From Paragordius varius (Eukaryota > Animalia > Nematomorpha), in NCBI GenBank assembly GCA_964247055.1, contig OZ176056.1, forward strand, positions 4,650,001 to 4,714,000: a stretch of 64,000 nucleotides of DNA, given 5' to 3'. Positions 40,852-56,738 of the stretch are shown one piece after another. The notes under the pieces were generated by a model, which saw only the letters and a list, made by a program, of their open reading frames with translations, was not told the origin of the DNA and made no database searches. Numbering within the stretch: position 1 is the stretch's first letter; the number at the start of each line of letters is the position of its first letter. The translations under genes and the position numbers were made by a program.

Positions 40852-41956
40852 GTTAAAACCCTACATTCAACCTTGAAATTCACCCTTCTCGAATTCCCCT
40901 TAAACATTTCAGTCCCACCTCATTGGAATATTATTGGGTTAAAATTAAATCCTATTGTAAAATATTTTAGCAGTGTTTATCATTTTTTCTGCTTCATTAC
41001 CCTAATTTAATGATTTGTCAAATTATAATATTTTTTTAAAATAAAAAATTAGTTAATTTATAATTTTAATATTTATAAAAAATACATCATGGGCAACTTA
41101 TCAATCAATCATTTGATAATTTTGCATTTAAGCTTTGAATACACACATTATTAACAATAATATACGCTGTGAAGATCGCCGTTTATTAAAAACTAAGCAA
41201 TATCCAAATTATATAATGGTTTGTGATTAAAAATATGATGGTTTTTAACGAATGATTTGATTTGTGATTTCTTTTTTAATTAAATCTCCCGACAAACCCT
41301 TTGATGAAAATGGGAATCAATAAATTGTATATTATTTTTACCCTGTTTTACGGCGAACTCCACATCCTTAATATTACAAACCCAGTTCGTTACCTACTCA
41401 ATTAAAACTATCAATGATAGTTAATAAAGTACTTATAAATTTATGATTTTATGGTTTTTTTAAGGACATAAGTGCATATACGAAAACATTTTTTAGAAGG
41501 GAAACGGTATATTAATATTATAAATGTAGGATTTTCCTTATGATGATATTTAATGATAAAACTTTATGATGCTAAATTATCAAAGAGCAAACCTCCTTTA
41601 ATATATAAAACGTATTTATTCCTATTATTTAATATTTTATAAATTAAAAATTATAATTGTAGTAGCAAAGCATACATATAAATTAAGACGATTGGGACCC
41701 AATTACCTATTATTAATTCGTTTAAAAATTTCTTATTAATTTTTAATCACTTTAACTGCTAAAACTGTAATAAAAACGAATTGGGGAAAACCATTTTGTA
41801 AAAAAAACGTTTACAAACCTGTTAGTAAATCATCCGCGTTTAAAGACCGAGTTAGTGCAATTTAACGCTCTTTTTAGATTAAGGAACATTTATATTTTTA
41901 TGACAAAATAACTTCATTGTTTTACAATTTATCGAATTTATTTAATATTCTAGGCA

Positions 41957-44900
41957 TTAGGGAAGTGTTATGAGATCATTAGTTGCATTTTCTTCTTTAA
42001 TTAAATCATTGAGCACAGCGATTTCATTTATGTCTCTAATAAGATTAGAGGATGAAATCTCAGGGATAACATTAGATATAGGTTCTGTTTTAACATTTTG
42101 AGTTTGATTGCCGCTGTTTGTGGCAAGATTCTGGTTTTCTCCCCCATAAGGTATCGATTGATAAATCTGTACTCCATATTTGTTGAACTTTCTTATTTCT
42201 AGTTACGCAATAAAAAGATTGATTACAAAAGAAAAATATCATAAATTTAATGCGACAATGATCAATACCTGCATGCCTAATAACTTTTTCACAACTTTGC
42301 ATATTTATGAATCGACACTGAGTTTCATTCAATCCAAACATAGAAGCCAAATTCCCGATGTCATAGGGGCCCCGTAAATCAAAAGTTTGTTCAGCTCCAC
42401 TAGAAAATATAATGTTTCGTATGTTGGGTTCTAGGCACAGTAATACATGTATGTGCCCAATCATATTGCGTCGAGTTTGTTTAGATTTTATCGCTATCAA
42501 AATTGTTAAAAAAAATTAAAATTATACAAGCGAAATGTATCATATAAAGACTGATATTTTGTTCAAAATAACCGCTATATTTTTTAACCTTGATTCTATT
42601 TAATAAAATTCATTGTTTAAAACTGCGAATAAAAAATGTAAATTGGTTCAATTTTATAATTTACAATTATATTTAGATAGTTCTTATGGGAAAAATTAAG
42701 GTTAAAAAAGTATGGTTGTTTATTGAGAAAAATACGTTTTGTCTGGTATAATTTTAAAATTTATTGTAAATATTTGAAATGAACAAAAATATTATAAAGT
42801 AACAAACAGTTTGTAAACACAACCTTTTGTAAAAAGAAGGTAATTAATAATATATATTCATAAAGTAGTATATCGCTGCTCGGTGTAAATAAAAAATAAA
42901 AAGTAATATAACGGTAACAAAGGTATTATTGCGCTTTAAAACACTTTTTAATTATAATGTTGTTTTATCCAAAATATATCTAAGAGTATTATCGAATTTA
43001 CAATAAAACGGGCAGGATCTAAATTGATAAGTATGAGTAAGTACGCATTGCTGGAAACTATTATTATCTATTGCCAAATAGTAAATACAACAAAAGGCAG
43101 TATTATTGGTTAATAATTGAAAAAAGTGAAAAAATAACTAAAAGTTAATAATACTGCCCTTTGTTATTACTATTATGCAATAATTAATAACTTCTAGCAA
43201 TGTATACTGATTCATACTGTAATGTTTATATTAAAACAACCAATTTATGCCGTTATATTTCAAAAGAGTTATTAATAATGCGAAAAATAATTATTAACTA
43301 TAATAAGTAAAATATATATACGTTCTATATAAAAGTTTCAAAGTTAAATTACTTTAAAAAAAATTTATAAAAATTTATTTTAGCAATAAAGAAGAATTAA
43401 TCTCAAGGCTTAAAAAAATTAATAGAGTTCCTATATTGATACAAACGTACCTGGAGCATAATTATATTCGATTGCTAATCCGTGGTGTAGGGCACTACGT
43501 ATATGGGATCTTTTAAAGCGTAAATTATTAGTATTCTTATTTTCCAGGGTATCTAAAATTTTTCAAGGAAAGACTGATAAAAATCTTTGTTTAAAGTATA
43601 TATATATATATATATATATAAAATGTTTTTTGCACGTTAGTTATGTTATTAATAATAAAGATTTGACTATATTGTACTATATAGTTTTAAAATTGTAACA
43701 AAATTTTCGATCTTTAATACATTTTTAATAAATTTTTCATGTTATTTTGGACATAAACTGTCGTTTTGGGTTTCAAAATAAGTTATAAATTGGTAAATTT
43801 ATGAAGAGACACAAAAAACAGTTTTCTTTACAGAAATATTAGTATATGATGTTTATATGTTTTATGGATTAATTTTACCCAAATTTATATATGATAATAT
43901 ATTGATATCTTAAATTTTTCCAATCAATTAATGTACCCGTGGACATGTTGATGGAAATTATATCAAAATCAGTGCCAGCATTTTCGCATGTGGCTTGGAA
44001 AATCTTTTGATCAGTCGGTTCTATGGCTATTAAATCAAATTTTTTGGCACGATCACAACGCAAGAAGCGAAAAGAATCCAAATTATCAATGATGAATGTA
44101 CATCTATACGTACGATTAAAAAGGCCCAATTATATATATTTGTAATATCATTTAGAAAAAAATAAAATTGAATAAAAATGATAAAAACCTTTGAAGTATT
44201 TGAACTGTTTTACACCGCTTAGCCGCATCAGATTGTGCAATGAGAGATTGGATTCGTCCAACACTAAGTTCAATAGGATCTGGGATTAACTAAAAAAAAA
44301 GTTTTGTTTTTAAGTTTGTCTACTCTTCTCAAAGACACAAGCGTAGATTTATTTAAATTTGACAAATGCAATGTTATTTAGTTAAATTCTGCACCGAATA
44401 AAAAAGTGCATTTATATATTTTAAAAGTAGTTCTACCGTTTAACGTCTAAATGCTTTTTTAAAAGCAAAGTATGTGTTTCTAAAATATTTTTTAATGTAT
44501 ATTGTTGTGGCGCAGTTAGCTTCTGCCAAAAGCAGTTTAATATAATCTATTTTCATGAAAAAAAATATTAATCTACAAAATGAGCATATAAACTATGACA
44601 TATTCTCTCAAATATATTTACAATCCAAATTCACCCTCGAACAATTCAAATTCACGATTATTTTTTCAGAATTATTTTAATTTTAATCAAATTTCATTTT
44701 TTTTAAAAAAAAAATAGAGGTATTTTTAACTTTAAAAATATAATTTATTTTATGGTTAATTTAAAGTGTTTAAGGGTGAATTTGAATTATTCAATGGTAA
44801 ATTTAAAGTGTAAATGGTATATACATTGTACACTCTACAGGAAACACTCAACAAAAGGTCCAAAATATAGTAATAAAATGGGTATTTTACAAATTCAAAA

Positions 44901-47900
44901 AATAAATATTTTTGCAACAAACTAACATTTTCTTTTGATGAGAATGAACCAATTTTTCGCCGTTTTTTGCAGGCCGTGGTATCGTCTGATTGTTCATTTT
45001 GCATGGTTTTACTGTTTTGGCTAAAATCTACCATTTGGTTCAAAGCTATCCGTCTATATCCCACTATATATGAAATTGGATTAATGTCATAATATTTATA
45101 AATTATACGAATGTTAAATAAATTATTCTTATAAAGCCAGTTACTCTAACCGCGGCCCTAATTTGGCTTTTTTATGGCCCCGAATTATTTCATAATTTTT
45201 TGATATATGTATTTGTAATAAATATGATAGGTTGAAAGAGGTATTGTAACCCCTAATAAGATTGGTCCTTTAAAATTTTTAGTTAGTCCCACTGTTATAT
45301 GTTAAAGAAGATTTATTAAAGATATTCTTTTTTTCTATAAAAGTATGGACTTGAAAATTAAAGGCATAATCCAGGTAAGTCGACTAGTTTGTCCCCCAAT
45401 TCCATTACAGTTTTTTCAAAAAAACCGAGTTATGCTAAATATGAATATTATATTTTTAAAATAGTTCTGCTGTTCCTTTAAGAATCAAAAAACATAAAAA
45501 TACAATATTTAATTATATTTATTTTAACAAAAAATTTTTAACTTTATTGAAATAAATAAATTCCATAAAAATCATATTACAGATATAAAAATTAATTATC
45601 TTTTCCCCTAAAAGGGTCATGTTGCAAATGAACCATGTATTTTTCAGACAATAGCATCCATATTAAAAACGTCGGAAATATGTCAGTCGATAAATAATAA
45701 AGTACGTTTCTTATACTGATTGGACTTGGGGAAGATACGGCTTATCCACATAGCCCGTTTTAAAAAATTCAAATTAATTTTTATAATTAAATTTTTGGTA
45801 TTCATTTTTTGTAATAAAATCAAAAATATCATAATTTTGGGCAAAGAAATAAACCTCAAAAAAACTACTAATCAAACGAGTTAGTTCACCAATATAAATT
45901 CAATAAAGAAATAATGGTGATCAGCATAAGCTAATTGTTGGTTGTGCGAAAAAACTAAGGAAACTGTTTAAAGTAAACTTCACCCGAATTCCTGAAATTT
46001 TATAGATATAACTGCCGTCTATATTCAAATTTTCTCTAACATATTGATTATTATTCCAAGAGAGAATTTTAAAATAGAAAAAATAAATTAAATTTATTAT
46101 TTAAGCTCAATTTTAGGGCTTCGAAATAACTACACTAATATATATGTGAAAAGATATATTCAACTTCAAACGATTCTAACTCAAAAACTAAGTCCTTATT
46201 TATAAATTGAAAAAGTGTATGTAAACAGCATTAACTAATTACCTTAGAGGTGTTGTCCATTATGAATAGCTATTATGGGATTTAAAAGGGGCCACATATA
46301 TATACCATTTACAATTCGAATTCATCCTTGAACAATTCCAATTCACCCTCGAACATTTCAAATTCACCCTAAAAATAAATTAAATGTTTTCGTGCTAATA
46401 TAACTCATCATTAATAATATATTCTTATGGCATAATTTATTATTTTTTTAGTAGTATATTAATTTTAAACAACATTTCATTGTTTATAAATATAAAAAAA
46501 TAGGTAATTTTTATTTTTGAAAACACCTAATTTATTTTAGGGTGAATTTGCAAGGGTGAATATGAATTGTTCAAGCGTGAATTTGAATTGTAAATGGTAT
46601 ATGTAATACGGCGTTCACAAGTTATTTGTGACTTAAATAAAAAAATTATGTATATTTGAAAATTATTGACTGAATTTTATGAAATTTTCCCGTGTATTTT
46701 ATTTGACAATTAATAATTAATAATCATTTTTATTCTTTTTTTTCACTATCACCATATGTTTTTCGTTATTTCAGGGTTGGACACCTAAAATTTGCTAGAA
46801 TGGCTTACTCTTTATACAGTCATGTATGTTTAGAATTGTCAGATATACGTTTTTGATTGATTTCACTTTGTTTTTAATTGTTTACACTAATTAAGCTATT
46901 TTTATTTTAATGCTTAAAAATGCGCATGTTGAAAGTTGACATATCAAACATTAAAACAATTAAAAACAAATTATAATCATTTAAAAACGAATTTCTGTCA
47001 ATTCTACATATACATGACTGTATTTAAAGATTACTATCTATGATCGAAAAAGCAACAAATTATATAACTAAATTTGTTATTCCATTTATATTAAGGTTAA
47101 ATATGCATAAAAAAATATTCTAAGATTACAAAGTTAATATATATGTCTTTTTAAAAACATGAGGTAAATAATACTCTATTTGGTTAATCATCTTTAAGAA
47201 TAAAATGTAATAGTGAATGTTAATCCTTAATCATAAATTGTTACGATTCGGCATATGACACCCGATCCTGTGATAATGAAAACATTCGGTAATAGTCAGA
47301 TTTTCTAATTTATGTAATTTTAGTTAAACTATAACGCAAAAAAGTTGTATTAGCTATTTATACATTTTAAAAGATCCACTTTTTAGCCATTATGAGAAAA
47401 ATTCGAATAAGTATTGTCCGAGGAAGGATAACGAATGCTTTCGTTAAATCCCTACGGCCATGTATAATATCAAATAAAATAGACCAAAACATGAACCTTA
47501 GTTAAACACTTGGATTTAAGCCATTCATTTCAGTCCTTCGATTCGAATTGAGGTCGTTGAATACCGCAGGTTTAAAATTAAATATTTCAAAAAATATGGG
47601 AAAAATTAAAACCTTGGCAAAAGTGCAATTATATAACATTGTTAAACTAAAATATAAAAAAAATCATTTTTAGAATACTTAATATTACTTATTCAGAGGA
47701 TAAACACAAAGTCAAAAATTTAACCACAATCACATGTATGCATAAACTAAATATAAAAGTATGGTAAAAATACCACTTATTTTAGCCTTAGGATCAAATG
47801 AGCACGATATATTGCAAAAATGTTGTAAAATAAAAATAGCGAAGTAGTCTGACATGGAAATTTTTTTCGAAATTAAATTTTATTATTTTGGCTTAAATAT

Positions 47901-50900
47901 ATAATTTTTATTAAGATAGAAGCATAAACGTATTTTGGAACCGTTTCTTTCGGTATTAAAAATACCAACCAAAATATGTCCGGGATATTTAGATACCCCC
48001 ATATGAATCGAAGTGTTAACACAGAGTGTATTCTGATTACACAGTGTTCAAAATTGGGGAGAGGGGAATAATATACTATGAATAAATATATATAAATAAT
48101 ATATATATATTTGAAAAAAATTTATAATAAAGATTAATGAATCTTTAATTTGAAAAAAGTTAAATAAAAACTAGGATTAGATACCCTCGTTTACGTTATG
48201 CATAATTATCTTGGTGCTTTAGGTTTTTACCAATCATTTAAGAAATTATTTACACTTTTGTATCGCTCCATATAGAAAAATCGCAAAATAGCGCAATTTT
48301 TGGCTTTCTCCAATGCCGAAATCCCGTTAGAATAATTAATATATGCTTGTTAGAATATGACATTAAAAATTATTTTTGGAAAAAAACAAATACTTATACA
48401 TTTAATTTTTTACGTTTGTTGAAGCGTATCATATCGTATTTTGAACATAGTTTGTAGTGTTAACGATATAAAATGCTTATTAATTATAAAAACACCTTTT
48501 CTATATAATTGGTAATACTGAAGATCTACCGCCTCAGATTATTATTAATTTAAATATGCCCTTTACTTTAAACTAAAATAGACCTTTTCCAAAAATCCGT
48601 TTCCATACTGCTTAAAAATATCACAAAATAGGCTTTCACATAGTTTTGTTAAAATTTAATTTTTGGAGCAAAGTGGTCGTTTTTAAAAAGGTTAATTTTT
48701 ATATCAATCTAATATAATTTCCTAGTGCGCTTTGTACCAATACTTGTTCACTTACTAGCCCATTTTGGCGGCGTAAAGAATTCAAGCTTTCGGCACATAT
48801 AAAAATAAAGCATGCTAATTTTTCTGCTATTAAAATATATTTTATAATTTATTTAAAAAATATCGGGGCTTATAAATCACTTTGCTTAAAACATAAAATT
48901 TTGATTAATGTAGACCAATTTTGCGACTTTCCTAATTACCACAAGAATGAAAATATCCTTAAATGTTGAATTCAGTACAACCATCAAAATATTAAAATGT
49001 ATAATCATGGGGTTTACTCCCAATTTTGTTACTTTATTCAAGGGGTACACATCATTTAAACTTTATTGTAACAATAATATTTGTTAAAGCATTATCAAAA
49101 ATTATATTGTTATTATTGTACAATATATTTAAAATTAATTAATAGCAAAACTAGTTTTAGGAAAAAATCGATATTTATTTGCGTACAAAGTACGTACATC
49201 CTTCCCATTGCCATGAAATTTAATCCTCCGGAAATAATATAATGATACATGTTTAATATTTTGTTTTTCATAAACTTTTTCATCAAAATAACCTTTGAAA
49301 TGTGGACTTTTTAAAATGAATTGTCACGGTAACTGAATAAAAAAAGTGTAATTAGTTATATGCTTAAAAGAGGTTTTTAATTTCAGACGTTTTTTTAAAA
49401 AAAAGATACGTTATAGGTAGGATAAAGCGGATGAAGAATATGTGTATTATGAATCAATCAAAATATAATGGTGGTTATTTCTAAAGTTTTGATTGAAAAC
49501 TTAAATAAAACCAAAAAGATGTACCCTAAAGATATCAATTAATAACGCACTTAGTTTCAACTAATTTATTACGGTAACAAATACTCTCATAAATTTATCA
49601 AATTAAATGCCCCTAAAGCAAATTCCGTTTGTTGTAAAACTTGTTAGATGCATAATCTAAGTCATAATAATTGTTTTAAGGCAATTAAATTTATATTAGT
49701 TACTGGTTATTTGGATATTCCGATTTTCATTTTAAATAATATACCAAACCGAATCCAACTAGTAGCTTTGGCACACATAAGAGACCTCCTATAAACATAA
49801 ACACCTTAACCACCATCATGAGCTTATTATTAGTGGGGTGAAAATCCATAATGATACAGCTTTGAATACGCCGAAGAAGTAAATATGTTTAAACAATTTG
49901 TTGATAGGAAAAACAATTATGTTGGGTTACTTAACATAAAATATATTATTCAACAAATTATTTGTCTCAATTATACTCTAAACTACCCTTGAACGTACCT
50001 TTTAAGAGCTCAAGCCCAAAAATATTTTTTAACTAAGACACTTTCATGAGTCCAGCATAATCTTGTTAATAAGTAATCAATTTAGATTGATTTGCAATAA
50101 AAGAACTTTTAAAATCATTTATAATAATAATTTTCATGTAATTATATAGTATATGTAATCAATAGAAAATAATTTTAAGATAGATTTGATATAGGATATC
50201 TGAAATTGTTATTCAAATATAAATATAACGCATTAAATGTCTAAATTATGAGAGAGAGAGAGTATATAAAGAAAAAAAAATAAATAACCAATATATTTCT
50301 ATAATGTGCTTTATAAAGAGAATTTGTCTTTGAAGAGACTGCAATGATATGCCATCATGCTTATTGTATAACTATAACGAATTAATTAATACAACGAACG
50401 TTTAAACTTTGTTGTACAAAGCAATCATTACATTGTGAACTTTATGCGTAGTGAGGTGTGAATGATTGGATCAATTGAAAAAAACCAATTTTTTGTTTAA
50501 TAATTAAATTATACAATTAATTATGGGCACATATCTAAAAAATTAGATCACCATACAACATATTTATGAGCATGCAAAATAAAGCAAATGAATTAAAACG
50601 GCCTGACATTATTAATCGTATGCTTGAATCATGTGATTATTTTTATCGTTTGGCGTCGATACAGTATTTTCCATCTATGGTAATGGAATTCTTTTATTAT
50701 TGCTAATATTGATAGATGGGGAAAGAGACATAACGCATGATTTCGGATGCAATGAAGATGTGGGCAATGTCGATGGTTTAGCCGACATATCAAATGGAGT
50801 CGTAAGCTTGATATTTACCAATTTAGGAGGAAGAGTGGTTTGATTTTGTAATTCTGGTTGTTGCTTAATTCGTGCCACTGACATTAATGAACAATTTGTA

Positions 50901-53448
50901 GCAATGGTGGTTGGATTACAAAAGCTTGATTTGGTCGTCGTTTGTTGTTGTGTTACAAAATTTTGTGGTGAAAACGTTTTGTTGGGAAACAGAGTTGAAT
51001 TAGTATGAGATGTAGGAGAAACTGTGACAGAGTTTGCATTGCTAACAACAAATGGAGGAATGCTATGAATATTGCGAGCCAAAACAGACCTTACATCATT
51101 CACAAAGCGTAGCGCATCTAAAAAGGGTAATAAATCCAGCAAAGCCGTGTCTTTAGGATCATTAAACCAAGAACGAATGTGAATTCCATTGTGAGGATAA
51201 TGTTGTTTGTAGGCTGAGGGTGAATTATCAAGTATACACACGCGTGAAAGATCGGGTTCAACTTTAGCTATATCTTTGCTAAAACTAAAATCACTTTCGC
51301 ATGTACAATGTTGTCTAAAAAATCTACGAGGAAACAATGATTCAGAATTGGTTAATTTCGTGAAATCTTTTCCAATTGTATTTGGGTCCACAACATTAAC
51401 AGTTTCTAAAGACATATCCGTTTCTTGTTGAAGTAAACACGTACTATTAACGTAAGCCTTAACTGATCGTTCCAAACTATCAGCTACGTTTGAACCATAT
51501 ATTTGTAAACTTGCTGTATATATTACGAGATCATACCATTGACTAACTATGGATAAAAATTTATCCACGTGAGGCCTTTTATAAACAAAAAATCGTACCG
51601 GATGTCTATCTATGGCCAATTTTAAAATAAAATCAGCATCTTTCACACCAGGAAGGACATTAGTGCCTAACGTTTTGTTATTGGCAATTAATCCAATGTT
51701 ATTCAAAAAAATGTTTTGATGCCGATAATTAATTGCTTTCATCCAATTGTACATGTACATGGATATAAAACTAATTAAAGATTGGCAAAGCAGTAAACTT
51801 ACACCAAGAGAATAGCACACATAACATAAGGTTATATAAAGTGTGTAAAAAAGACATATTGACACATAAGCTATAAAACATTTGGGTAAATGATAGGTAA
51901 TTAAGAGAACCAAAGCAAAAGAACGCAGCCCGCAGACAATGCATGTTTGAGTGAAAAACTGTCCCAATGTAAATCCTTGATTTTTATTGTTTTTTGACGT
52001 TTTTTCCGTCATTGGTATGGTATTGCATTTATCATCATTCTTTTTGTGATTAATTATATTATTGTGGTCAAAATAATTGTTGTAAGCTGGTAAGTGAAAT
52101 AAAGTTTTGATACAATCCAAACTAATAAACACCAACTGAGGTATATAATTTACAACATATTTTTTATCGAGGTTATCTGCATGTTTTTTTACATTCAATT
52201 GGTCCACAATTAGTTTTTCGTAATGTGAAAGATATATTTCATATAACATAAATAATGATCCTAACCGGGACCAAAGGGATAGAGTATCAAATAAAGATAG
52301 TTTGGTTTGAGCAATAGGAGTTTTGGTGCCAACAGGTAAAACTGAAATCGGGTAGGTAAGAGATCTGACATTTGTAGGGCCTTTCAAAATACGTGAAGCA
52401 TTCAAGTCACCAAATGAAGAATTCAGTTTTGTATTAATATTCATCCAAGTTGTTGTAAAACAATCTCTTAAAGTTTGAATCATTGTGGCCTGATGAGCTT
52501 TCTGTTGTTGGTGTGAAAGAAGTGCGGTACGCCAGACAATATTATTTTCGTGATATGAATGGATAAGCGTTTCATCCAAATCCAATATAAGTACCTTCCG
52601 CTTCAAAAGAGTTAACATGTGGAAAGATAACGGACTTAAACAGAAGTATTCCGACACATGTTTGGAGAAAGGGTTAATTTTATGTTTTTTTGCTTTTTGA
52701 TTTTTTTTCGAACATTGTTTGGATAATAATTTATCATTATTACTGAGCAGAGGTATAATTGCATCTTTATTATTAAAAACGGATTCTTTTTTATCAAAAA
52801 CTATTTTGTTTTCAATATTATTGGTGGCGTCAACAGATAAACAACTTAAGTTTTGATCACATTTAAATTTTGGAAGGATTCCAAATGCATCAATAAGTTT
52901 AAAACGTTTCAATTTGGTGGGATTTATAGTTAGAAGAGAATAGATTTTGTGTAAAGTGAAATACACCTTCTTACGACCATTACTTGTAAAAAGTCCCAGA
53001 GTTAATATCGCCCAAAGTATTGTCAAAATTATATATAAACATTTAAATAATGATGTTAAAGTGACTGTTAAAGAATTTACATATTTGGTATAAAATGTCA
53101 TTAACGAAGAATCATGAGATGATTGGTTGTGTTGATAGACTAGAGTGGCTGAATGCATTTCATTGTTAGAATTATTATGTATATTTTGATAATACAATGG
53201 TTTCGACATGAATTTATACGAGGATAAAATAGATTTTCTGCACATCATCTTTCAAGATGTTAGTAAAACAATTGGTGTTTTAAAATCCGCACCACACCAC
53301 GCATAAAGCTACACACAATACATTTTAGTATAATGTCAAAAAATATTAGAAATAAAAATTACTTACATTCAAAGGCAAATTTAATAGTATCCAATAGGAA
53401 TTGATCATTTTTCTTGGCGATAATGTTTAGGTCACAAAAAGCAGGCAT
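41957..53448 (-). CDS. RPP30: Ribonuclease P/MRP protein subunit p30, 7 exons, about 351 aa
   Basis: Exons 53448-53367 ([27 protein letters not shown], phase 1, donor GTAAGT), 45063-44927, 44289-44189, 44103-43937, 43552-43451, 42493-42269, 42198-41957 (1056 nt). Motifs: [70 protein letters not shown]. No other suitable first exon was found between 45064 and 53366. Confidence 0.92.
43030..43219. mobile_element. Degenerate palindromic Tc1-type MITE (RPP30 intron 5)
   Basis: Arms AGTATGAGTAAGTACGCATTGCTGGAA / TTCTAGCAATGTATACTGATTCATACTG|TA and CAAAAGGCAGTATTATT / AATAATACTGCCCTTTG. Confidence 0.55.
44613..44817. mobile_element. Family B MITE, degenerate left end
   Basis: AAATTCACCCTCGAACAATTC ... 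GGGTGAATTTGAATT ... GTGTAAATGG|TATA. Confidence 0.7.
46305..46597. mobile_element. Family B MITE, well preserved
   Basis: TATA|CCATTTACAATTCGAATTC ... GAATTTGAATTGTAAATGG|TATA with three 21-bp units per end. Confidence 0.88.
46817..47020. mobile_element. MITE derived from the element at 55612-56738
   Basis: TA|CAGTCATGTAT ... ATACATGACTG|TA. Segment 46905-47020 matches the right TIR of 55612-56738 (CTTAAAAATGCGCATGTTGAAAGTTGACATATCAAAC). Confidence 0.88.
47503..48019. mobile_element. Family A MITE, diverged copy (RPP30 intron 1)
   Basis: TAAACACTTGGAT ... GAATCGAAGTGTTAA. Confidence 0.8.
50675..53248 (-). CDS. CTDNEP1: CTD nuclear envelope phosphatase 1 (Dullard/Nem1 family HAD phosphatase), single exon, 857 aa
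   Basis: Uninterrupted 2574-nt ORF with an N-terminal hydrophobic segment, [61 protein letters not shown] and [27 protein letters not shown]. The C-terminal motifs fit CTDNEP1 better than CTDSP/SCP. Confidence 0.95.
53249..53265 (-). promoter_or_regulatory. Candidate branch point and 3' splice site directly before the CTDNEP1 ATG
   Basis: Minus strand TACTAAC (53265-53259), then ATCTTGAAAG|ATG. Use of this site is inferred, not shown. Confidence 0.55.
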
Positions 53449-55611
53449 CTGAGATAATGGGTAAATCGAAAATCCGAACCGTAAATATTGAAAACAAAAT
53501 TTTCAAATGCAAAAAAAATAAATATTTTAAAAATGAGTAATTTAATATTTATGTACATATATATTATTTTTGATACAATTTATAACAAAAAAAACATTCA
53601 ACTATATATTGTTTTATTAAATCCATGAAAGTTTTATGATAAAAATGGGGATAGTCCTGTAAAGATATATATATATAATTTTGATAGGAAAAGTATGGAC
53701 TATCATAACACTTTTGGTATTGGTCCTAAGAGTGATTTTCATAAGTAATTGCATTTTCTGGTAACCGCACCATATCATAAGATTAGAATAGGCACATGTT
53801 ATATAATTTTTTGTAAATAGGACAAAAAAAGCAAAACGATTTTTAAAGAATTTTAGATTTTATAGTTTTTAATTATTTGGACCCCAAAATGGGTGAGTTC
53901 TCTATATAAAGATGATAGAGCCAAGATTGCCTACTAGCTATAAATATTTGTTAAATCTTGACATTACATTATGACCCTTTTATTTTTTCGGCCGCAATGA
54001 AATTGGGATAGTTTTTTTATCTCAGAGCTCAATATTATAAATAAACTTTTAAAGTCATTATTTATTCTCAAATATTGTTCACGTATATTAGATTAAAAGC
54101 TTATATATTTTCCAGAAACTAGCTCCAAAAATGGATTGAAATAAACAGCTGGTGTAAGGGGATAAATCTCCAGTATTTCTGGTAAGATGTATTCAGCTTA
54201 ATAAATTTAATTATTTTTTGATTTTAACCAATTTGACCGTATTAGCTATTATATATAATAAAAAAACGGGCGAATTTATGATGAGTTTTAGAATTGCACA
54301 TTTTTTAAAAAATATTTTTAAATTCCGCCCAATACCTTTGATACTTATTAATATATTCAATTAGAAATCCTTCTGGGATGTAAAACTAGCCGAAAAGATC
54401 ATATAGTGTTAAGAACAGAATATCAAAAAATGAACAAAGAAGCACATAAACTTAAATTTTTTAGTTCAGACGCTTTTAAACATAAAATATAATTGAGCAC
54501 AAGATCATCAATGCATAAATCCGAATGTATATCTTCTGAAAAAAAATTATTAGGAATATCATAGTGCCTTTGGTTTTGGGCCGACGAGTGATATAAGTAA
54601 AAAATTACCACTTGGGTGCTACCGTAATGCAAAATTCGCACCTTTTAGGCGCCTGCGTTTGATATCGGGGAGGGTGCATAAAATATGATCTGATGATATA
54701 TATATATATTCTGATAGAAAAATGCATCAGTTTTATCATGGTGCTTTTGGTTTTGGCCCTTACGAGAGATTTGAGAAAGTTATTTACTCTAAACTCCATA
54801 TAAAAATGAAAATATTTGCTCACAATAAATAAAGTTTTTTGGTGAAAGTTAAATGCTTCATTCCAAAATCTATATAATATCATTAAGTAGATATAAAATG
54901 TAAAAAGATATTTTTAAATTTTTTTATAAGATGTGGGCTTAAAAAGTTCTAAATTTTTTGGCTCCTAAATAGGCTAGTTATCTTAAAATACGCAACAATG
55001 CAAATTGCATTTAGAATATTTTAAATATACGCTATTTGATATCAACAAAAATTATTTTTATGCATTCTCTTTAAATAATTTCATTTTTGGCAGATTTCTG
55101 TTGCAGCGTACTTCTTCAGGCATGCACACTATAAAAGAGCTTTAGGATATTATGCACATTTTTTTATATATTTTGAATCTACACATTTCTAGCGTTTTAG
55201 AATTTTAAGTAGGTTCTTTTCATCGGTTAAATTTCGTAAAAAGGCACAATTTATATTTAACATAATTTTAAAGACGATAGAATATTTTAATCAATATTGT
55301 GAGGTGATAGAAATGTTCAGCATCAAACTATATTGAAAAAGTGTTTTTATTATATCTTAAAGGTTTTTTTACTGTTTTTATCATGACTATAGGATGAGAT
55401 ACGCTTGAAAATTTTGCTAAAATTATATTTTTGAAAAAAGATATGCACATTTTTAAAAATATTTTGAATTGGTATCAAAAATAAGCATATATTTATATTT
55501 TTCAGGCACCTTGGTATTTTTGCTTTTATTTTTAGAGAACTACCCTTTTTTAGAACAGCAAAAAAATTTGGACTTTCGGAGCCCACATCTAAAAATTAAA
55601 ATAATTTAATA

Positions 55612-56738
55612 CAGTCATGTCTATATAGAATTGTCTTTTTTTTTTATTTAAATGATTATAATTTTTTTTAATTGTTTTGATGTTTGATATGTCAACTTTC
55701 AACATGCGCATTTTTAAGCCTTAAAATAATAGTAGCCTATTTATTGTAAGAATTTTTAATTTATAATTAAAAGATATTGCAAAATATTATTCTTGATGCA
55801 CAACATGCGCATATTGTAATTTTTATCTTTTGTAAAATATTAATTATAAAATTTTATTAATAAAGTTTAAACACACATAACCAAAATATAATTTAAAAGA
55901 TAAAAATATTTATTGATTATAATATTTAAATAAATTTATAATTGTTTTCATTTTCTAGGGGTTTTCTTTGTATACATTCCAACAAAATATGTGAAGAAAA
56001 ATTAAAATAATTTTTTAGATTTTTTTCCCTTCTCTCTTCGCAAAGTCTTGAAATTTTGTTATGCTGCTCTAAAGGGGTACTACACCGGGGTTTTTTATCA
56101 AATTGATGTTTAATCTCATGAAAAAAACATTCAATGGGATTCAGTTGTGGCGAATAAGGAGGTAAATAAACAATTTTATTTCTTAGCTCACCTACAACCA
56201 CAGCTTTGTGAATAGGTGCATTATCGCAAACTATTATTGAACTTAATAAAAACTGAGGGAGCTATGTTTTCCTTTAATATTGGATTTCGTTCTGAATTTT
56301 TATTTTTTAATATAAACCTTCAAGTACACTAGCTGCCGAGCAAAGAAGAAATAATGGGTTATCGTTGATATTCATAATTTTTTAAAATAACTCTAGATTT
56401 ATGATTTATTTCTTTATATATATAGAGATTAAATGGACATCTGCTTGGGTTTTCTTATATATTTTAAGTGCATGTTAAAAACCCCTAGAAAATGAAAACA
56501 TATATTAAACTTGGTTATCATAAATTACATGCGCATGTTGTAGATAAAATGTTCAAGAATAATATTTTGCAACATCTTTTAATTATAAATTAAAAATTCT
56601 TACACTAAATAGGCTATTATTATTTTAAGGCTTAAAAATGCGCATGTTGAAAGTTGACATATCAAACATCAAAACAATTAAAAAAAAATTATAATCATTT
56701 AAATAAAAAAAAAAGACAATTCTATATAGACATGACTG
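55612..56738 (-). mobile_element. Internally deleted IS630/Tc1/mariner element with about 190-200-bp TIRs
   Basis: TA|CAGTCATGTCTATATAGAATTG ... CAATTCTATATAGACATGACTG|TA. Near-identical long TIRs, each with two CAACATGCGCAT copies. Transposase fragment inside. Confidence 0.92.
55926..56375 (-). pseudogene. DDE transposase C-terminal remnant
   Basis: IIVCDNAPIHK ... VYLPPYSPQLNPIECFFHEIK. Upstream in-frame stops, and the N-terminal part is missing. Confidence 0.88.

What the first reader, a model, noticed from the sequence alone, without database searches (positions are those of the whole stretch)
41957..53448. Intronless CTDNEP1 nested on the same strand inside RPP30 intron 1, probably sharing its promoter and first exon
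Seen: RPP30 exon 1 (82 nt, GTAAGT donor at 53366) is separated from exon 2 by 8303 nt. The complete 857-aa CTDNEP1 ORF starts 118 nt after that donor on the same strand, directly after TACTAAC...AAG|. An ATTAAA (minus strand, 50501-50496) follows its stop. Established: nested genes are more often antisense to the host; RPP30 is an RNase P/MRP subunit, and CTDNEP1/Nem1 dephosphorylates lipin at the nuclear envelope. Inference: one transcription unit makes two unrelated enzymes by choosing between a proximal acceptor plus intronic polyadenylation (CTDNEP1) and a distal acceptor (RPP30). An intronless ORF in an intron-rich genome suggests a retrocopy that trapped the RPP30 promoter. Such a switch could couple tRNA/rRNA processing to membrane-lipid control.
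Basis: partly seen in the sequence, partly recalled or inferred. Interest (0 to 1): 0.9.

Follow-up and report, generated by a model that had tools for sequence, protein, structure and literature searches.

The report
CTDNEP1 gene nested in RPP30 intron

Summary
An 857-codon CTDNEP1/Nem1-type ORF (50675-53248, minus strand) starts 118 nt after the GTAAGT donor of an 82-nt RPP30 exon 1. It lies inside an 8,303-nt intron of a clean seven-exon, 351-aa RPP30 gene.

New evidence comes from run X5, which behaves like RNA:
- It holds 0.67 of the sampled words in the CTDNEP1 stretch but 0.21 in the RPP30 exon/intron stretch, and has zero depth over plain intron.
- One X5 contig runs without a gap from 53110 to 53452: CTDNEP1 start, spacer and all of RPP30 exon 1.
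- No 53367->53248 joint was listed.
- X5 contigs are colinear through most of the ORF, including almost all of the ~294-aa insertion.

The proposed acceptor is weak. It is AAG, whereas all six RPP30 acceptors are TAG, and TACTAAC is no commoner in the window than chance. Splicing there would make an out-of-frame upstream ORF that overlaps the CTDNEP1 start.

Best reading (about 0.5): shared 5' region, with the outcome set by intronic polyadenylation versus removal of the 8.3-kb intron, not by a choice of acceptors. An independent internal start site is not excluded. I found no retrocopy hallmarks and no relatives for a synteny check. The closest known analogue is the ChAT/VAChT cholinergic locus.

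The parts
53367..53448 (-). RPP30 exon 1: ATG plus 27 codons plus 1 nt (phase 1)
   Evidence: Joined to exon 2, it matches Pfam RNase_P_p30 profile positions 1-40. It is the only ATG..F.DLN.. candidate with a phase-1 GT donor in 45064-53700.
53361..53366 (-). Donor GTAAGT of RPP30 intron 1. If the intron is retained, the RPP30 frame stops at TAA two codons later (GAA TGT AAG TAA).
53249..53366 (-). 118-nt spacer between the donor and the CTDNEP1 ATG. It holds two short upstream ORFs, a unique GC-rich 16-mer (53287-53302), TACTAAC (53259-53265) and an in-frame TGA two codons before the ATG.
   Evidence: Folding shows no special RNA structure (z = -0.19).
50675..53248 (-). Single-exon CTDNEP1/Nem1-type phosphatase ORF, 857 aa, stop codon included
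   Evidence: The listed X5 contigs are colinear with it.
52544..52645 (-). Catalytic piece 1 (aa 202-235) with the DLDETLIHS motif
   Evidence: Alignment to human CTDNEP1 8ujl.
51662..52543 (-). Lineage-specific in-frame insertion (aa 236-529, about 294 aa) with hydrophobic segments at aa 431-499
   Evidence: The listed X5 contigs cover it from 51686 upward almost continuously, without gaps. No relative of it was found in 1.8 billion representative proteins.
51062..51661 (-). Catalytic pieces 2 and 3 (aa 530-595 and 631-729), separated by a 35-aa insertion
50496..50501 (-). ATTAAA, the candidate poly(A) signal, 174 nt after the stop. A T-rich run (TTGGTTTTTTTC) follows within 25 nt.
   Evidence: X5 depth falls from 13 (50601-50800) to 3.3 (50401-50600), then 1.8 (50201-50400).
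53110..53452 (-). Stretch covered by one ungapped contig of the RNA-like run X5 (343 aligned nt of a 381-nt contig, depth 3.8). It spans the CTDNEP1 5' end, the spacer and RPP30 exon 1, and ends 4 nt upstream of the RPP30 ATG.
   Evidence: table 8, record 32. It is the only X5 contig laid on 53201-53600: depths of 3.8 and 0.99 equal that contig alone.
45064..53366 (-). RPP30 intron 1 (8,303 nt), which hosts CTDNEP1
44927..45063 (-). RPP30 exon 2
44189..44289 (-). RPP30 exon 3
43937..44103 (-). RPP30 exon 4
43451..43552 (-). RPP30 exon 5
42269..42493 (-). RPP30 exon 6
41957..42198 (-). RPP30 exon 7, stop codon included

Best explanation
CTDNEP1 is an expressed, single-exon gene nested on the same strand in RPP30 intron 1. 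Its transcripts, or at least some of them, begin at or upstream of the RPP30 start codon.

One start region at about 53450-53500 then gives a primary transcript with two possible fates:
1. It stays unspliced and is cut and polyadenylated inside the intron, at the ATTAAA at 50501 or somewhat beyond. This gives a CTDNEP1 mRNA whose leader is RPP30 exon 1 plus the 118-nt spacer.
2. The polymerase passes that site and the whole 8.3-kb intron is removed from the GTAAGT donor to the acceptor at 45064. This gives RPP30 mRNA.

The switch is splicing versus intronic polyadenylation, not a choice between two acceptors. In the unspliced mRNA the RPP30 reading frame ends at a TAA inside the donor motif, after 29 residues. 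CTDNEP1 would therefore be translated by leaky scanning or reinitiation past short upstream ORFs.

Shown: the anatomy, and an RNA-like contig that joins exon 1, spacer and ORF.
Inferred: a single start site, the poly(A) site, the competition between the two fates, and the mode of translation.
For: - X5 behaves as RNA of this same organism. It holds 0.67 of the words on 50300-53700 but 0.21 on 41900-45100. Coding exons make up 974 of those 3,201 nt, roughly 0.25-0.30 of the words by my estimate. The DNA runs X1-X3 hold 0.73-0.99 of both stretches.
- X5 depth is 0 at 48601-48800, 49201-50000 and 53601-53800, against 1.7-13 over 50201-53400. It shares haplotype SNPs with X2 and X3 (table 3).
- X5 record 32 covers 53110-53452 with no gap and no differences. 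It is the only X5 contig on the spacer and exon 1.
- No 53367->53248 joint is listed for any run.
- Plain intron downstream of CTDNEP1 has zero X5 depth. The unspliced RNA therefore ends after CTDNEP1 and is not whole pre-mRNA or lariat.
- ATTAAA at 50501 is the only canonical hexamer, and X5 depth drops across it.
- The retained-intron frame stops at once, and the upstream ORFs are short.
- The RPP30 ATG has C at -3 and the CTDNEP1 ATG has A at -3.
- Exon 1 is the only RPP30-like first exon upstream of exon 2.
Against: - The support is one assembled contig of depth 3.8. A contig can merge reads from different molecules, for example RPP30 mRNA or pre-mRNA over exon 1 plus a CTDNEP1 mRNA that starts in the spacer.
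- The run's library type is not on record. I inferred RNA from its coverage pattern.
- Contigs drop rare variants, so a minor spliced form cannot be excluded.
- Six upstream ATGs in the unspliced leader make it a poor template. That argues for a start site nearer the ATG for the main mRNA.
- X5 clearly holds RPP30 exons, yet the contig does not break at the donor. I cannot explain this fully.
- Only 24 of 121 loose ends were shown, so leader or junction ends at 53248 or 53367 may have gone unlisted.
Confidence: 0.5

Rival explanations
1. Nested but independent. CTDNEP1 has its own promoter and start site inside the spacer or RPP30 exon 1. The X5 contig is then an assembly merge of its mRNA with reads from RPP30 transcripts. 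The only interaction would be that RPP30 transcription must read through the CTDNEP1 poly(A) site.
For: - A start near the ATG would avoid the six upstream ATGs.
- A unique GC-rich 16-mer, GCGTGGTGTGGTGCGG, lies 39-54 nt upstream of the ATG in a 25% GC genome. It could be a promoter element.
- The tool itself warns that a contig across two genes shows no single transcript.
- Independent promoters for a nested gene inside the host's first intron are documented for VAChT (PMC3053374, citing Cervini 1995).
Against: - The spacer, including its donor-proximal half, is covered in X5 at the contig's mean depth, while plain intron is at 0. Some unspliced RNA therefore starts upstream of the donor and ends after CTDNEP1.
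- The contig does not break at the donor, as a mix with spliced RPP30 reads should make it.
Confidence: 0.3
2. RPP30 exon 1 is cis-spliced either to a proximal acceptor at 53249|53248 (followed by intronic polyadenylation, giving CTDNEP1 mRNA) or to the distal acceptor at 45064|45063 (giving RPP30 mRNA).
For: - A GTAAGT donor, a 118-nt interval, a TACTAAC 11 nt before AAG, and the AG lying directly before the ATG.
- The cholinergic locus works partly this way (PMC3053374).
Against: - No such joint is listed, and the X5 contig crosses the interval unspliced.
- The acceptor is AAG with a poor pyrimidine tract, against TAG in all six RPP30 acceptors.
- TACTAAC is at chance frequency.
- The spliced mRNA puts the RPP30 ATG into a 38-codon out-of-frame ORF that ends 33 nt past the CTDNEP1 ATG. 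This would hinder CTDNEP1 translation more than the unspliced form does.
Confidence: 0.1
3. Operon-like resolution. The CTDNEP1 mRNA is made by spliced-leader trans-splicing onto the AAG|ATG acceptor of an RPP30-driven precursor, as in the operons of nematodes, the sister phylum.
For: - An acceptor-like AG lies directly before the ATG.
- Other readers' unchecked notes report several same-strand, tightly packed gene pairs in this genome.
Against: - The X5 contig passes 53248 with no break, and no loose end is listed there.
- The window has no spliced-leader RNA match in Rfam.
- The paper library holds no paper with both 'Nematomorpha' and 'spliced leader', and only one with 'nematomorph' and 'trans-splicing', which I did not read.
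Confidence: 0.05

Closest known systems
Cholinergic gene locus (VAChT inside the first intron of ChAT; unc-17/cha-1 in C. elegans)
   Same: A single-exon ORF for an unrelated protein lies in the first intron of its host, and the locus uses shared upstream regions. The arrangement is conserved in nematode, Drosophila and mammals, with multiple promoters and alternative splicing (PMC3053374). That the two genes share orientation and a 5' exon is from my memory.
   Different: - The two products here are not in one pathway.
- The host's first exon is coding, whereas from memory the shared cholinergic exon is non-coding.
- The only RNA evidence shows no splice onto the nested ORF.
- Conservation in relatives could not be tested.
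Host/nested gene pairs with intronic ('premature') polyadenylation of the host
   Same: Nested genes sit preferentially in first or 5' introns of their hosts. Expression of the nested gene has been linked to polyadenylation of the host upstream of or at the nested gene (PMC11694760; Kaer 2011, PMC3192792, is cited there and listed).
   Different: Those cases mostly involve a nested gene with its own promoter, often a retrogene at an imprinted locus, and a truncated host isoform. Here the 'truncated host isoform' would itself be the nested gene's mRNA.
Nematode operons resolved by spliced-leader trans-splicing
   Same: One promoter would serve two unrelated housekeeping genes on one strand. The organism is probably from the sister phylum; this rests on other agents' notes and on the 26.9% GC of Gordionus.
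   Different: The downstream gene lies inside an intron of the upstream gene, not after its 3' end. No spliced leader was seen.
Retrogene that landed in an intron and uses the host promoter
   Same: An intron-free ORF in an intron-rich gene neighbourhood, on the same strand, next to the host's first exon.
   Different: No poly(A) remnant beyond A6 and no target-site duplication. A parental copy could not be searched for. If it is a retrocopy, it is old and is now the working gene.

Membership tests
CTDNEP1/Nem1 (FCP/SCP-type HAD phosphatase) | NIF/FCP1-homology domain scoring above Pfam's threshold | tested here: met
   PF03031, 132.6 bits against a cut-off of 21.8.
CTDNEP1/Nem1 (FCP/SCP-type HAD phosphatase) | DxDx(T/V) catalytic motif, and closer to CTDNEP1 than to the SCP or TIM50 branches | tested here: met
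   [12 protein letters not shown] aligns to human CTDNEP1. 8ujl scores E 7e-62, against 6e-26 for SCP1 and 8e-14 for TIM50.
CTDNEP1/Nem1 (FCP/SCP-type HAD phosphatase) | N-terminal hydrophobic membrane anchor | tested here: met
   A hydrophobic stretch at aa 59-91, maximum Kyte-Doolittle score 2.27. This is a sequence prediction only.
CTDNEP1/Nem1 (FCP/SCP-type HAD phosphatase) | Binds NEP1-R1/Spo7 and dephosphorylates lipin | not testable with these tools
   Biochemical property. The 294-aa insertion after motif I could affect it.
RPP30 (RNase P/MRP subunit p30) | RNase_P_p30 domain along a complete in-frame gene model | tested here: met
   Seven exons give 351 aa with no internal stop. PF01876 matches profile positions 1-40, 68-120 and 148-208. 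Human RPP30 6ahr_I matches at E 6e-8.
Shared-promoter nested pair of the cholinergic-locus type | Nested ORF in the host's first intron, on the same strand | tested here: met
Shared-promoter nested pair of the cholinergic-locus type | Nested-gene mRNAs that contain the host's first exon | tested here: inconclusive
   One X5 contig (depth 3.8) joins exon 1 to the ORF. An assembled contig does not prove a single molecule.
Shared-promoter nested pair of the cholinergic-locus type | Host first exon spliced onto an acceptor in front of the nested ORF | tested here: not met
   No 53367->53248 joint is listed, and the contig is unspliced there. Rare forms cannot be excluded.
Retrocopy | Poly(A) tract at the 3' end and flanking target-site duplication | tested here: not met
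   Only an A6 run follows the ATTAAA. No direct repeat pairs the 5' spacer with the 3' flank. These marks decay, so an old event is not excluded.
Retrocopy | An intron-containing parental copy elsewhere in the genome or in relatives | not testable with these tools
   Only this window is readable. The scan's notes list no other CTDNEP1 in this genome.
Spliced-leader operon | A common non-genomic leader on the downstream gene's mRNA | tested here: inconclusive
   None seen at 53248 in X5. However, only 24 of 121 loose ends were shown, and depth is low.

The most novel reading that the evidence does not exclude
This animal is probably a horsehair worm. Its genome may systematically place intron-free genes on the same strand in the first introns of housekeeping genes, about 120 nt behind the donor. 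Unchecked notes report Myt1 in RPS11, CHMP5 in DKC1 and DPAGT1 in MRPL53, besides this case. One promoter would then drive two unrelated mRNAs, with the outcome set by competition between intron removal and intronic polyadenylation. That would be an operon substitute without spliced-leader trans-splicing, in the sister phylum of the nematodes.
Probability: 0.2. Interest if true: 0.75.

Novelty: new member of a known kind. Interest (0 to 1): 0.45.

Why it matters
Whatever promoter CTDNEP1 uses, every RPP30 pre-mRNA must read through a complete same-strand gene and its poly(A) site. The output of an essential RNase P/MRP subunit is therefore structurally tied to the processing of a lipid-metabolism gene.

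If the shared-start reading holds and recurs at the other nested pairs noted in this genome, it would show how a relative of the nematodes packs genes under one promoter without classical operons.

In practice, gene finders will probably miss either the nested gene or the distant RPP30 first exon. I also found a run (X5) that behaves as RNA for this genome. Other agents working on it reported having no RNA data.

Tried and rejected
- **Relatives and synteny.** The whole-ORF search, the C-terminal-half search and HMMER against 1.8 billion representatives found only ordinary CTDNEP1 cores at about 50-64% identity. Local phmmer and BLASTP against the fetched proteins found nothing matching the N-terminal extension, the insertions or the tail.
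- **Candidates with inserts.** On look-up these were fungi, yeasts and other non-relatives.
- **Exact look-up.** The exact protein is not on record.
- **RPP30 route to a relative.** The RPP30 exon 6 ORF found no candidates. The length filter excludes full-length RPP30, and I did not type the assembled protein.
- **Short exon peptides.** Alone against PDB they gave nothing.
- **Rfam.** No RNA family matched in the window.
- **TACTAAC as a branch signal.** Rejected: 5 occurrences against 7.5 expected.
- **In-frame RPP30-CTDNEP1 chimera.** Rejected: the join is out of frame, and an in-frame TGA lies two codons before the ATG.
- **Alternative RPP30 first exon in the intron.** None has the N-terminal motif with a phase-1 donor.
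- **Structured leader.** z = -0.19.
- **Target-site duplication.** None found.
- **X5 loose end at 51253.** It has no match in the window and is unexplained, perhaps an assembly or haplotype effect.
- **Selection from SNPs.** Among the listed haplotype SNPs in the ORF, 4 are synonymous and 9 are not. That is too few to show selection.

Full report
**Observation**

The minus strand carries an 857-codon ORF at 50675-53248. It is the outlier of the window: only four ORFs of 130 aa or more occur in 64 kb of about 25% GC DNA. At that composition, a stop-free run of 857 codons has a chance near 1e-31 by my calculation.

The ORF is a CTDNEP1/Nem1-type phosphatase. Pfam NIF scores E 1.3e-38. Human CTDNEP1 (8ujl) is the best solved relative at E 7.4e-62, well ahead of SCP1 and TIM50. 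It aligns in three pieces: aa 202-235 with an intact [12 protein letters not shown] motif, aa 530-595 and aa 631-729. The protein therefore carries:
- an extension of about 200 aa at the N-terminus, with a hydrophobic stretch at aa 59-91;
- an in-frame insertion of about 294 aa, with hydrophobic segments;
- a 35-aa insertion;
- a tail of about 130 aa.

**The host gene**

From the sequence I built a seven-exon RPP30 model: 53448-53367, 45063-44927, 44289-44189, 44103-43937, 43552-43451, 42493-42269 and 42198-41957. It reads through as 1,056 nt, or 351 aa, without a stop.

Pfam RNase_P_p30 matches the exon 4 and exon 6 ORFs at 38.7 and 52 bits. The 44-aa N-terminus made by joining exon 1 to exon 2 matches profile positions 1-40 across the junction, at 17.8 bits and E 0.0024. 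Human RPP30 matches the exon 6 ORF.

A scan of 45064-53700 for any other ATG-led peptide with the F.DLN-type start and a phase-1 GT donor found only the exon at 53448.

**RNA evidence**

Runs X1-X3 are genomic DNA. Their depth is flat across intron and ORF, and they hold 0.73-0.99 of the sampled words in both stretches I asked about.

Run X5 is filed under another organism label, but it shares haplotype SNPs with X2 and X3. It behaves differently from the DNA runs:
- It holds 0.67 of the words on 50300-53700, which is nearly all CTDNEP1.
- It holds only 0.21 on 41900-45100. Coding exons make up 974 of those 3,201 nt, roughly 0.25-0.30 of the words by my estimate.
- Its depth is zero at 48601-48800, 49201-50000 and 53601-53800, against 1.7-13 from 50201 to 53400.

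I therefore treat X5 as RNA of this organism. The library type is not on record.

Three things follow from X5:
1. Its listed contigs are colinear with the genome over 50854-51468, 51529-51679 and 51686-52901, with no gaps. No intron is seen to be removed from the ORF, and almost all of the large insertion (from 51686 upward) is present in the RNA.
2. One contig (record 32, depth 3.8) runs without a gap or mismatch from 53110 to 53452. That covers the CTDNEP1 start, the whole 118-nt spacer, the donor and all of RPP30 exon 1, ending 4 nt upstream of the RPP30 ATG. The binned depths (3.8, then 0.99) show it is the only X5 contig there.
3. No 53367->53248 joint is listed in any run.

Plain intron beyond CTDNEP1 is at zero depth. 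The unspliced RNA that covers the spacer is therefore not whole pre-mRNA or lariat. It ends after CTDNEP1.

**The proposed acceptor**

All six RPP30 acceptors read TAG after T-rich tracts. The proposed one reads CATCTTGAAAG. TACTAAC is not a genome signal here: 5 copies in the window against 7.5 +/- 2.8 expected.

Joining exon 1 to 53248 is out of frame. It gives a 38-codon ORF from the RPP30 ATG that overlaps the CTDNEP1 start. An in-frame TGA two codons upstream of the CTDNEP1 ATG rules out any N-terminal fusion.

Left unspliced, the RPP30 frame stops at a TAA inside GTAAGTAA after 29 residues. Short upstream ORFs follow, the last ending 9 nt before the CTDNEP1 ATG. The RPP30 ATG has C at -3 and the CTDNEP1 ATG has A at -3. 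The leader shows no special fold.

**The 3' end**

ATTAAA at 50501-50496 is the only canonical hexamer from the stop down to 49900, and a T-rich run follows it. X5 depth falls across it from 13 to 3.3 and then 1.8. Some transcripts may therefore end further on.

**Most likely mechanism (confidence about 0.5)**

One start region just upstream of 53452 produces a transcript with two possible fates. Either it is polyadenylated inside the intron and serves as CTDNEP1 mRNA, with RPP30 exon 1 as an upstream-ORF-bearing leader. Or it reads past that site, loses the 8.3-kb intron and becomes RPP30 mRNA.

One point holds whatever the start site: RPP30 expression requires read-through of a same-strand poly(A) site.

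The main rival (0.3) is an independent start site in the spacer, with the contig being a merge of reads from different molecules. The six upstream ATGs in the leader and a unique GC-rich 16-mer at 53287-53302 speak for it.

One oddity remains. X5 holds RPP30 exons, yet the contig does not break at the donor, as a mix of spliced and unspliced reads should force. Low 5'-end coverage of RPP30 mRNA, or graph cleaning during assembly, may explain it.

**Origin**

I found no retroposition marks: only an A6 run behind the hexamer and no flanking direct repeats.

Between haplotypes, both listed indels inside the ORF are 3 nt long (at 50955 and 52862). The ten listed indels outside it are 1, 2 or 5 nt. 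This fits a maintained reading frame. The listed SNPs (4 synonymous, 9 not) are too few to judge.

No protein in the large libraries shares the extension, the insertions or the tail. The orthologous locus in relatives could not be reached.

**Organism**

Other agents' notes call this genome a horsehair worm, and one of them reports Myt1 nested in RPS11 intron 1. The 26.9% GC of Gordionus montsenyensis fits. I did not verify the identity myself.

**Comparison with known systems**

The nearest described system is the cholinergic gene locus. There the single-exon VAChT ORF lies in the first intron of ChAT, in nematode, fly and mammals, with several promoters and alternative splicing (PMC3053374).

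Mammalian host/nested pairs also favour first introns. In some, nested-gene activity is linked to intronic polyadenylation of the host (PMC11694760).

This locus is a new example of that kind. It has a coding host first exon and, so far, no splice onto the nested ORF.

The wider idea is that this genome uses first-intron nesting as an operon substitute. It rests on unchecked first-reader notes, and I give it about 0.2.

Noticed in passing
window 47801-53800 (run X5): Run X5, filed under a different organism label, behaves as an RNA data set of this same organism: it covers exons only and shares haplotype SNPs with the DNA runs. Several other follow-ups on this genome reported having no RNA evidence. 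X5 might show their 21-26-nt introns directly.
   Followed up: partly
window 51662-52543 (-): The ~294-aa insertion directly after the DxDxT motif of CTDNEP1 is present in the RNA-like contigs from 51686 upward, so it is not a hidden intron. It contains hydrophobic segments at aa 431-499. No homologue was found in 1.8 billion representative proteins.
   Followed up: partly
window 48384-49122: A structural polymorphism inside RPP30 intron 1. All three DNA runs have contigs that leave the reference at 48384, and X5 has a form that skips 48394-49121 with 13 other letters in between. It is probably a transposable-element insertion carried by one haplotype.
   Followed up: no
window 47801-48000: A very high-copy repeat: word depth is about 44,000-102,000 against 100-600 for the flanks in the DNA runs.
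   Followed up: no
window 53449-53470 (-): The RPP30 ATG is itself directly preceded by an acceptor-like TTTACCCATTATCTCAG|ATG. The X5 contig ends only 4 nt upstream of the ATG with no extra letters. An upstream non-coding exon or very short 5' UTR is possible.
   Followed up: no
window 41819-41827 (-): TACTAACAG lies about 130 nt downstream of the RPP30 stop and about 110 nt behind the AATAAA at about 41930. It might be an acceptor of a following same-strand gene, or a chance match.
   Followed up: no
window 55926-56201 (-): A fragment of a DDE_3 (Tc1/mariner-type) transposase, E 5.6e-8, in the 5.6-kb gap between RPP30 and the ZNF367-like gene on the plus strand.
   Followed up: partly
window 50955 and 52862: Both listed haplotype indels inside the CTDNEP1 ORF are 3 nt long. 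The ten listed indels outside it are 1, 2 or 5 nt.
   Followed up: partly
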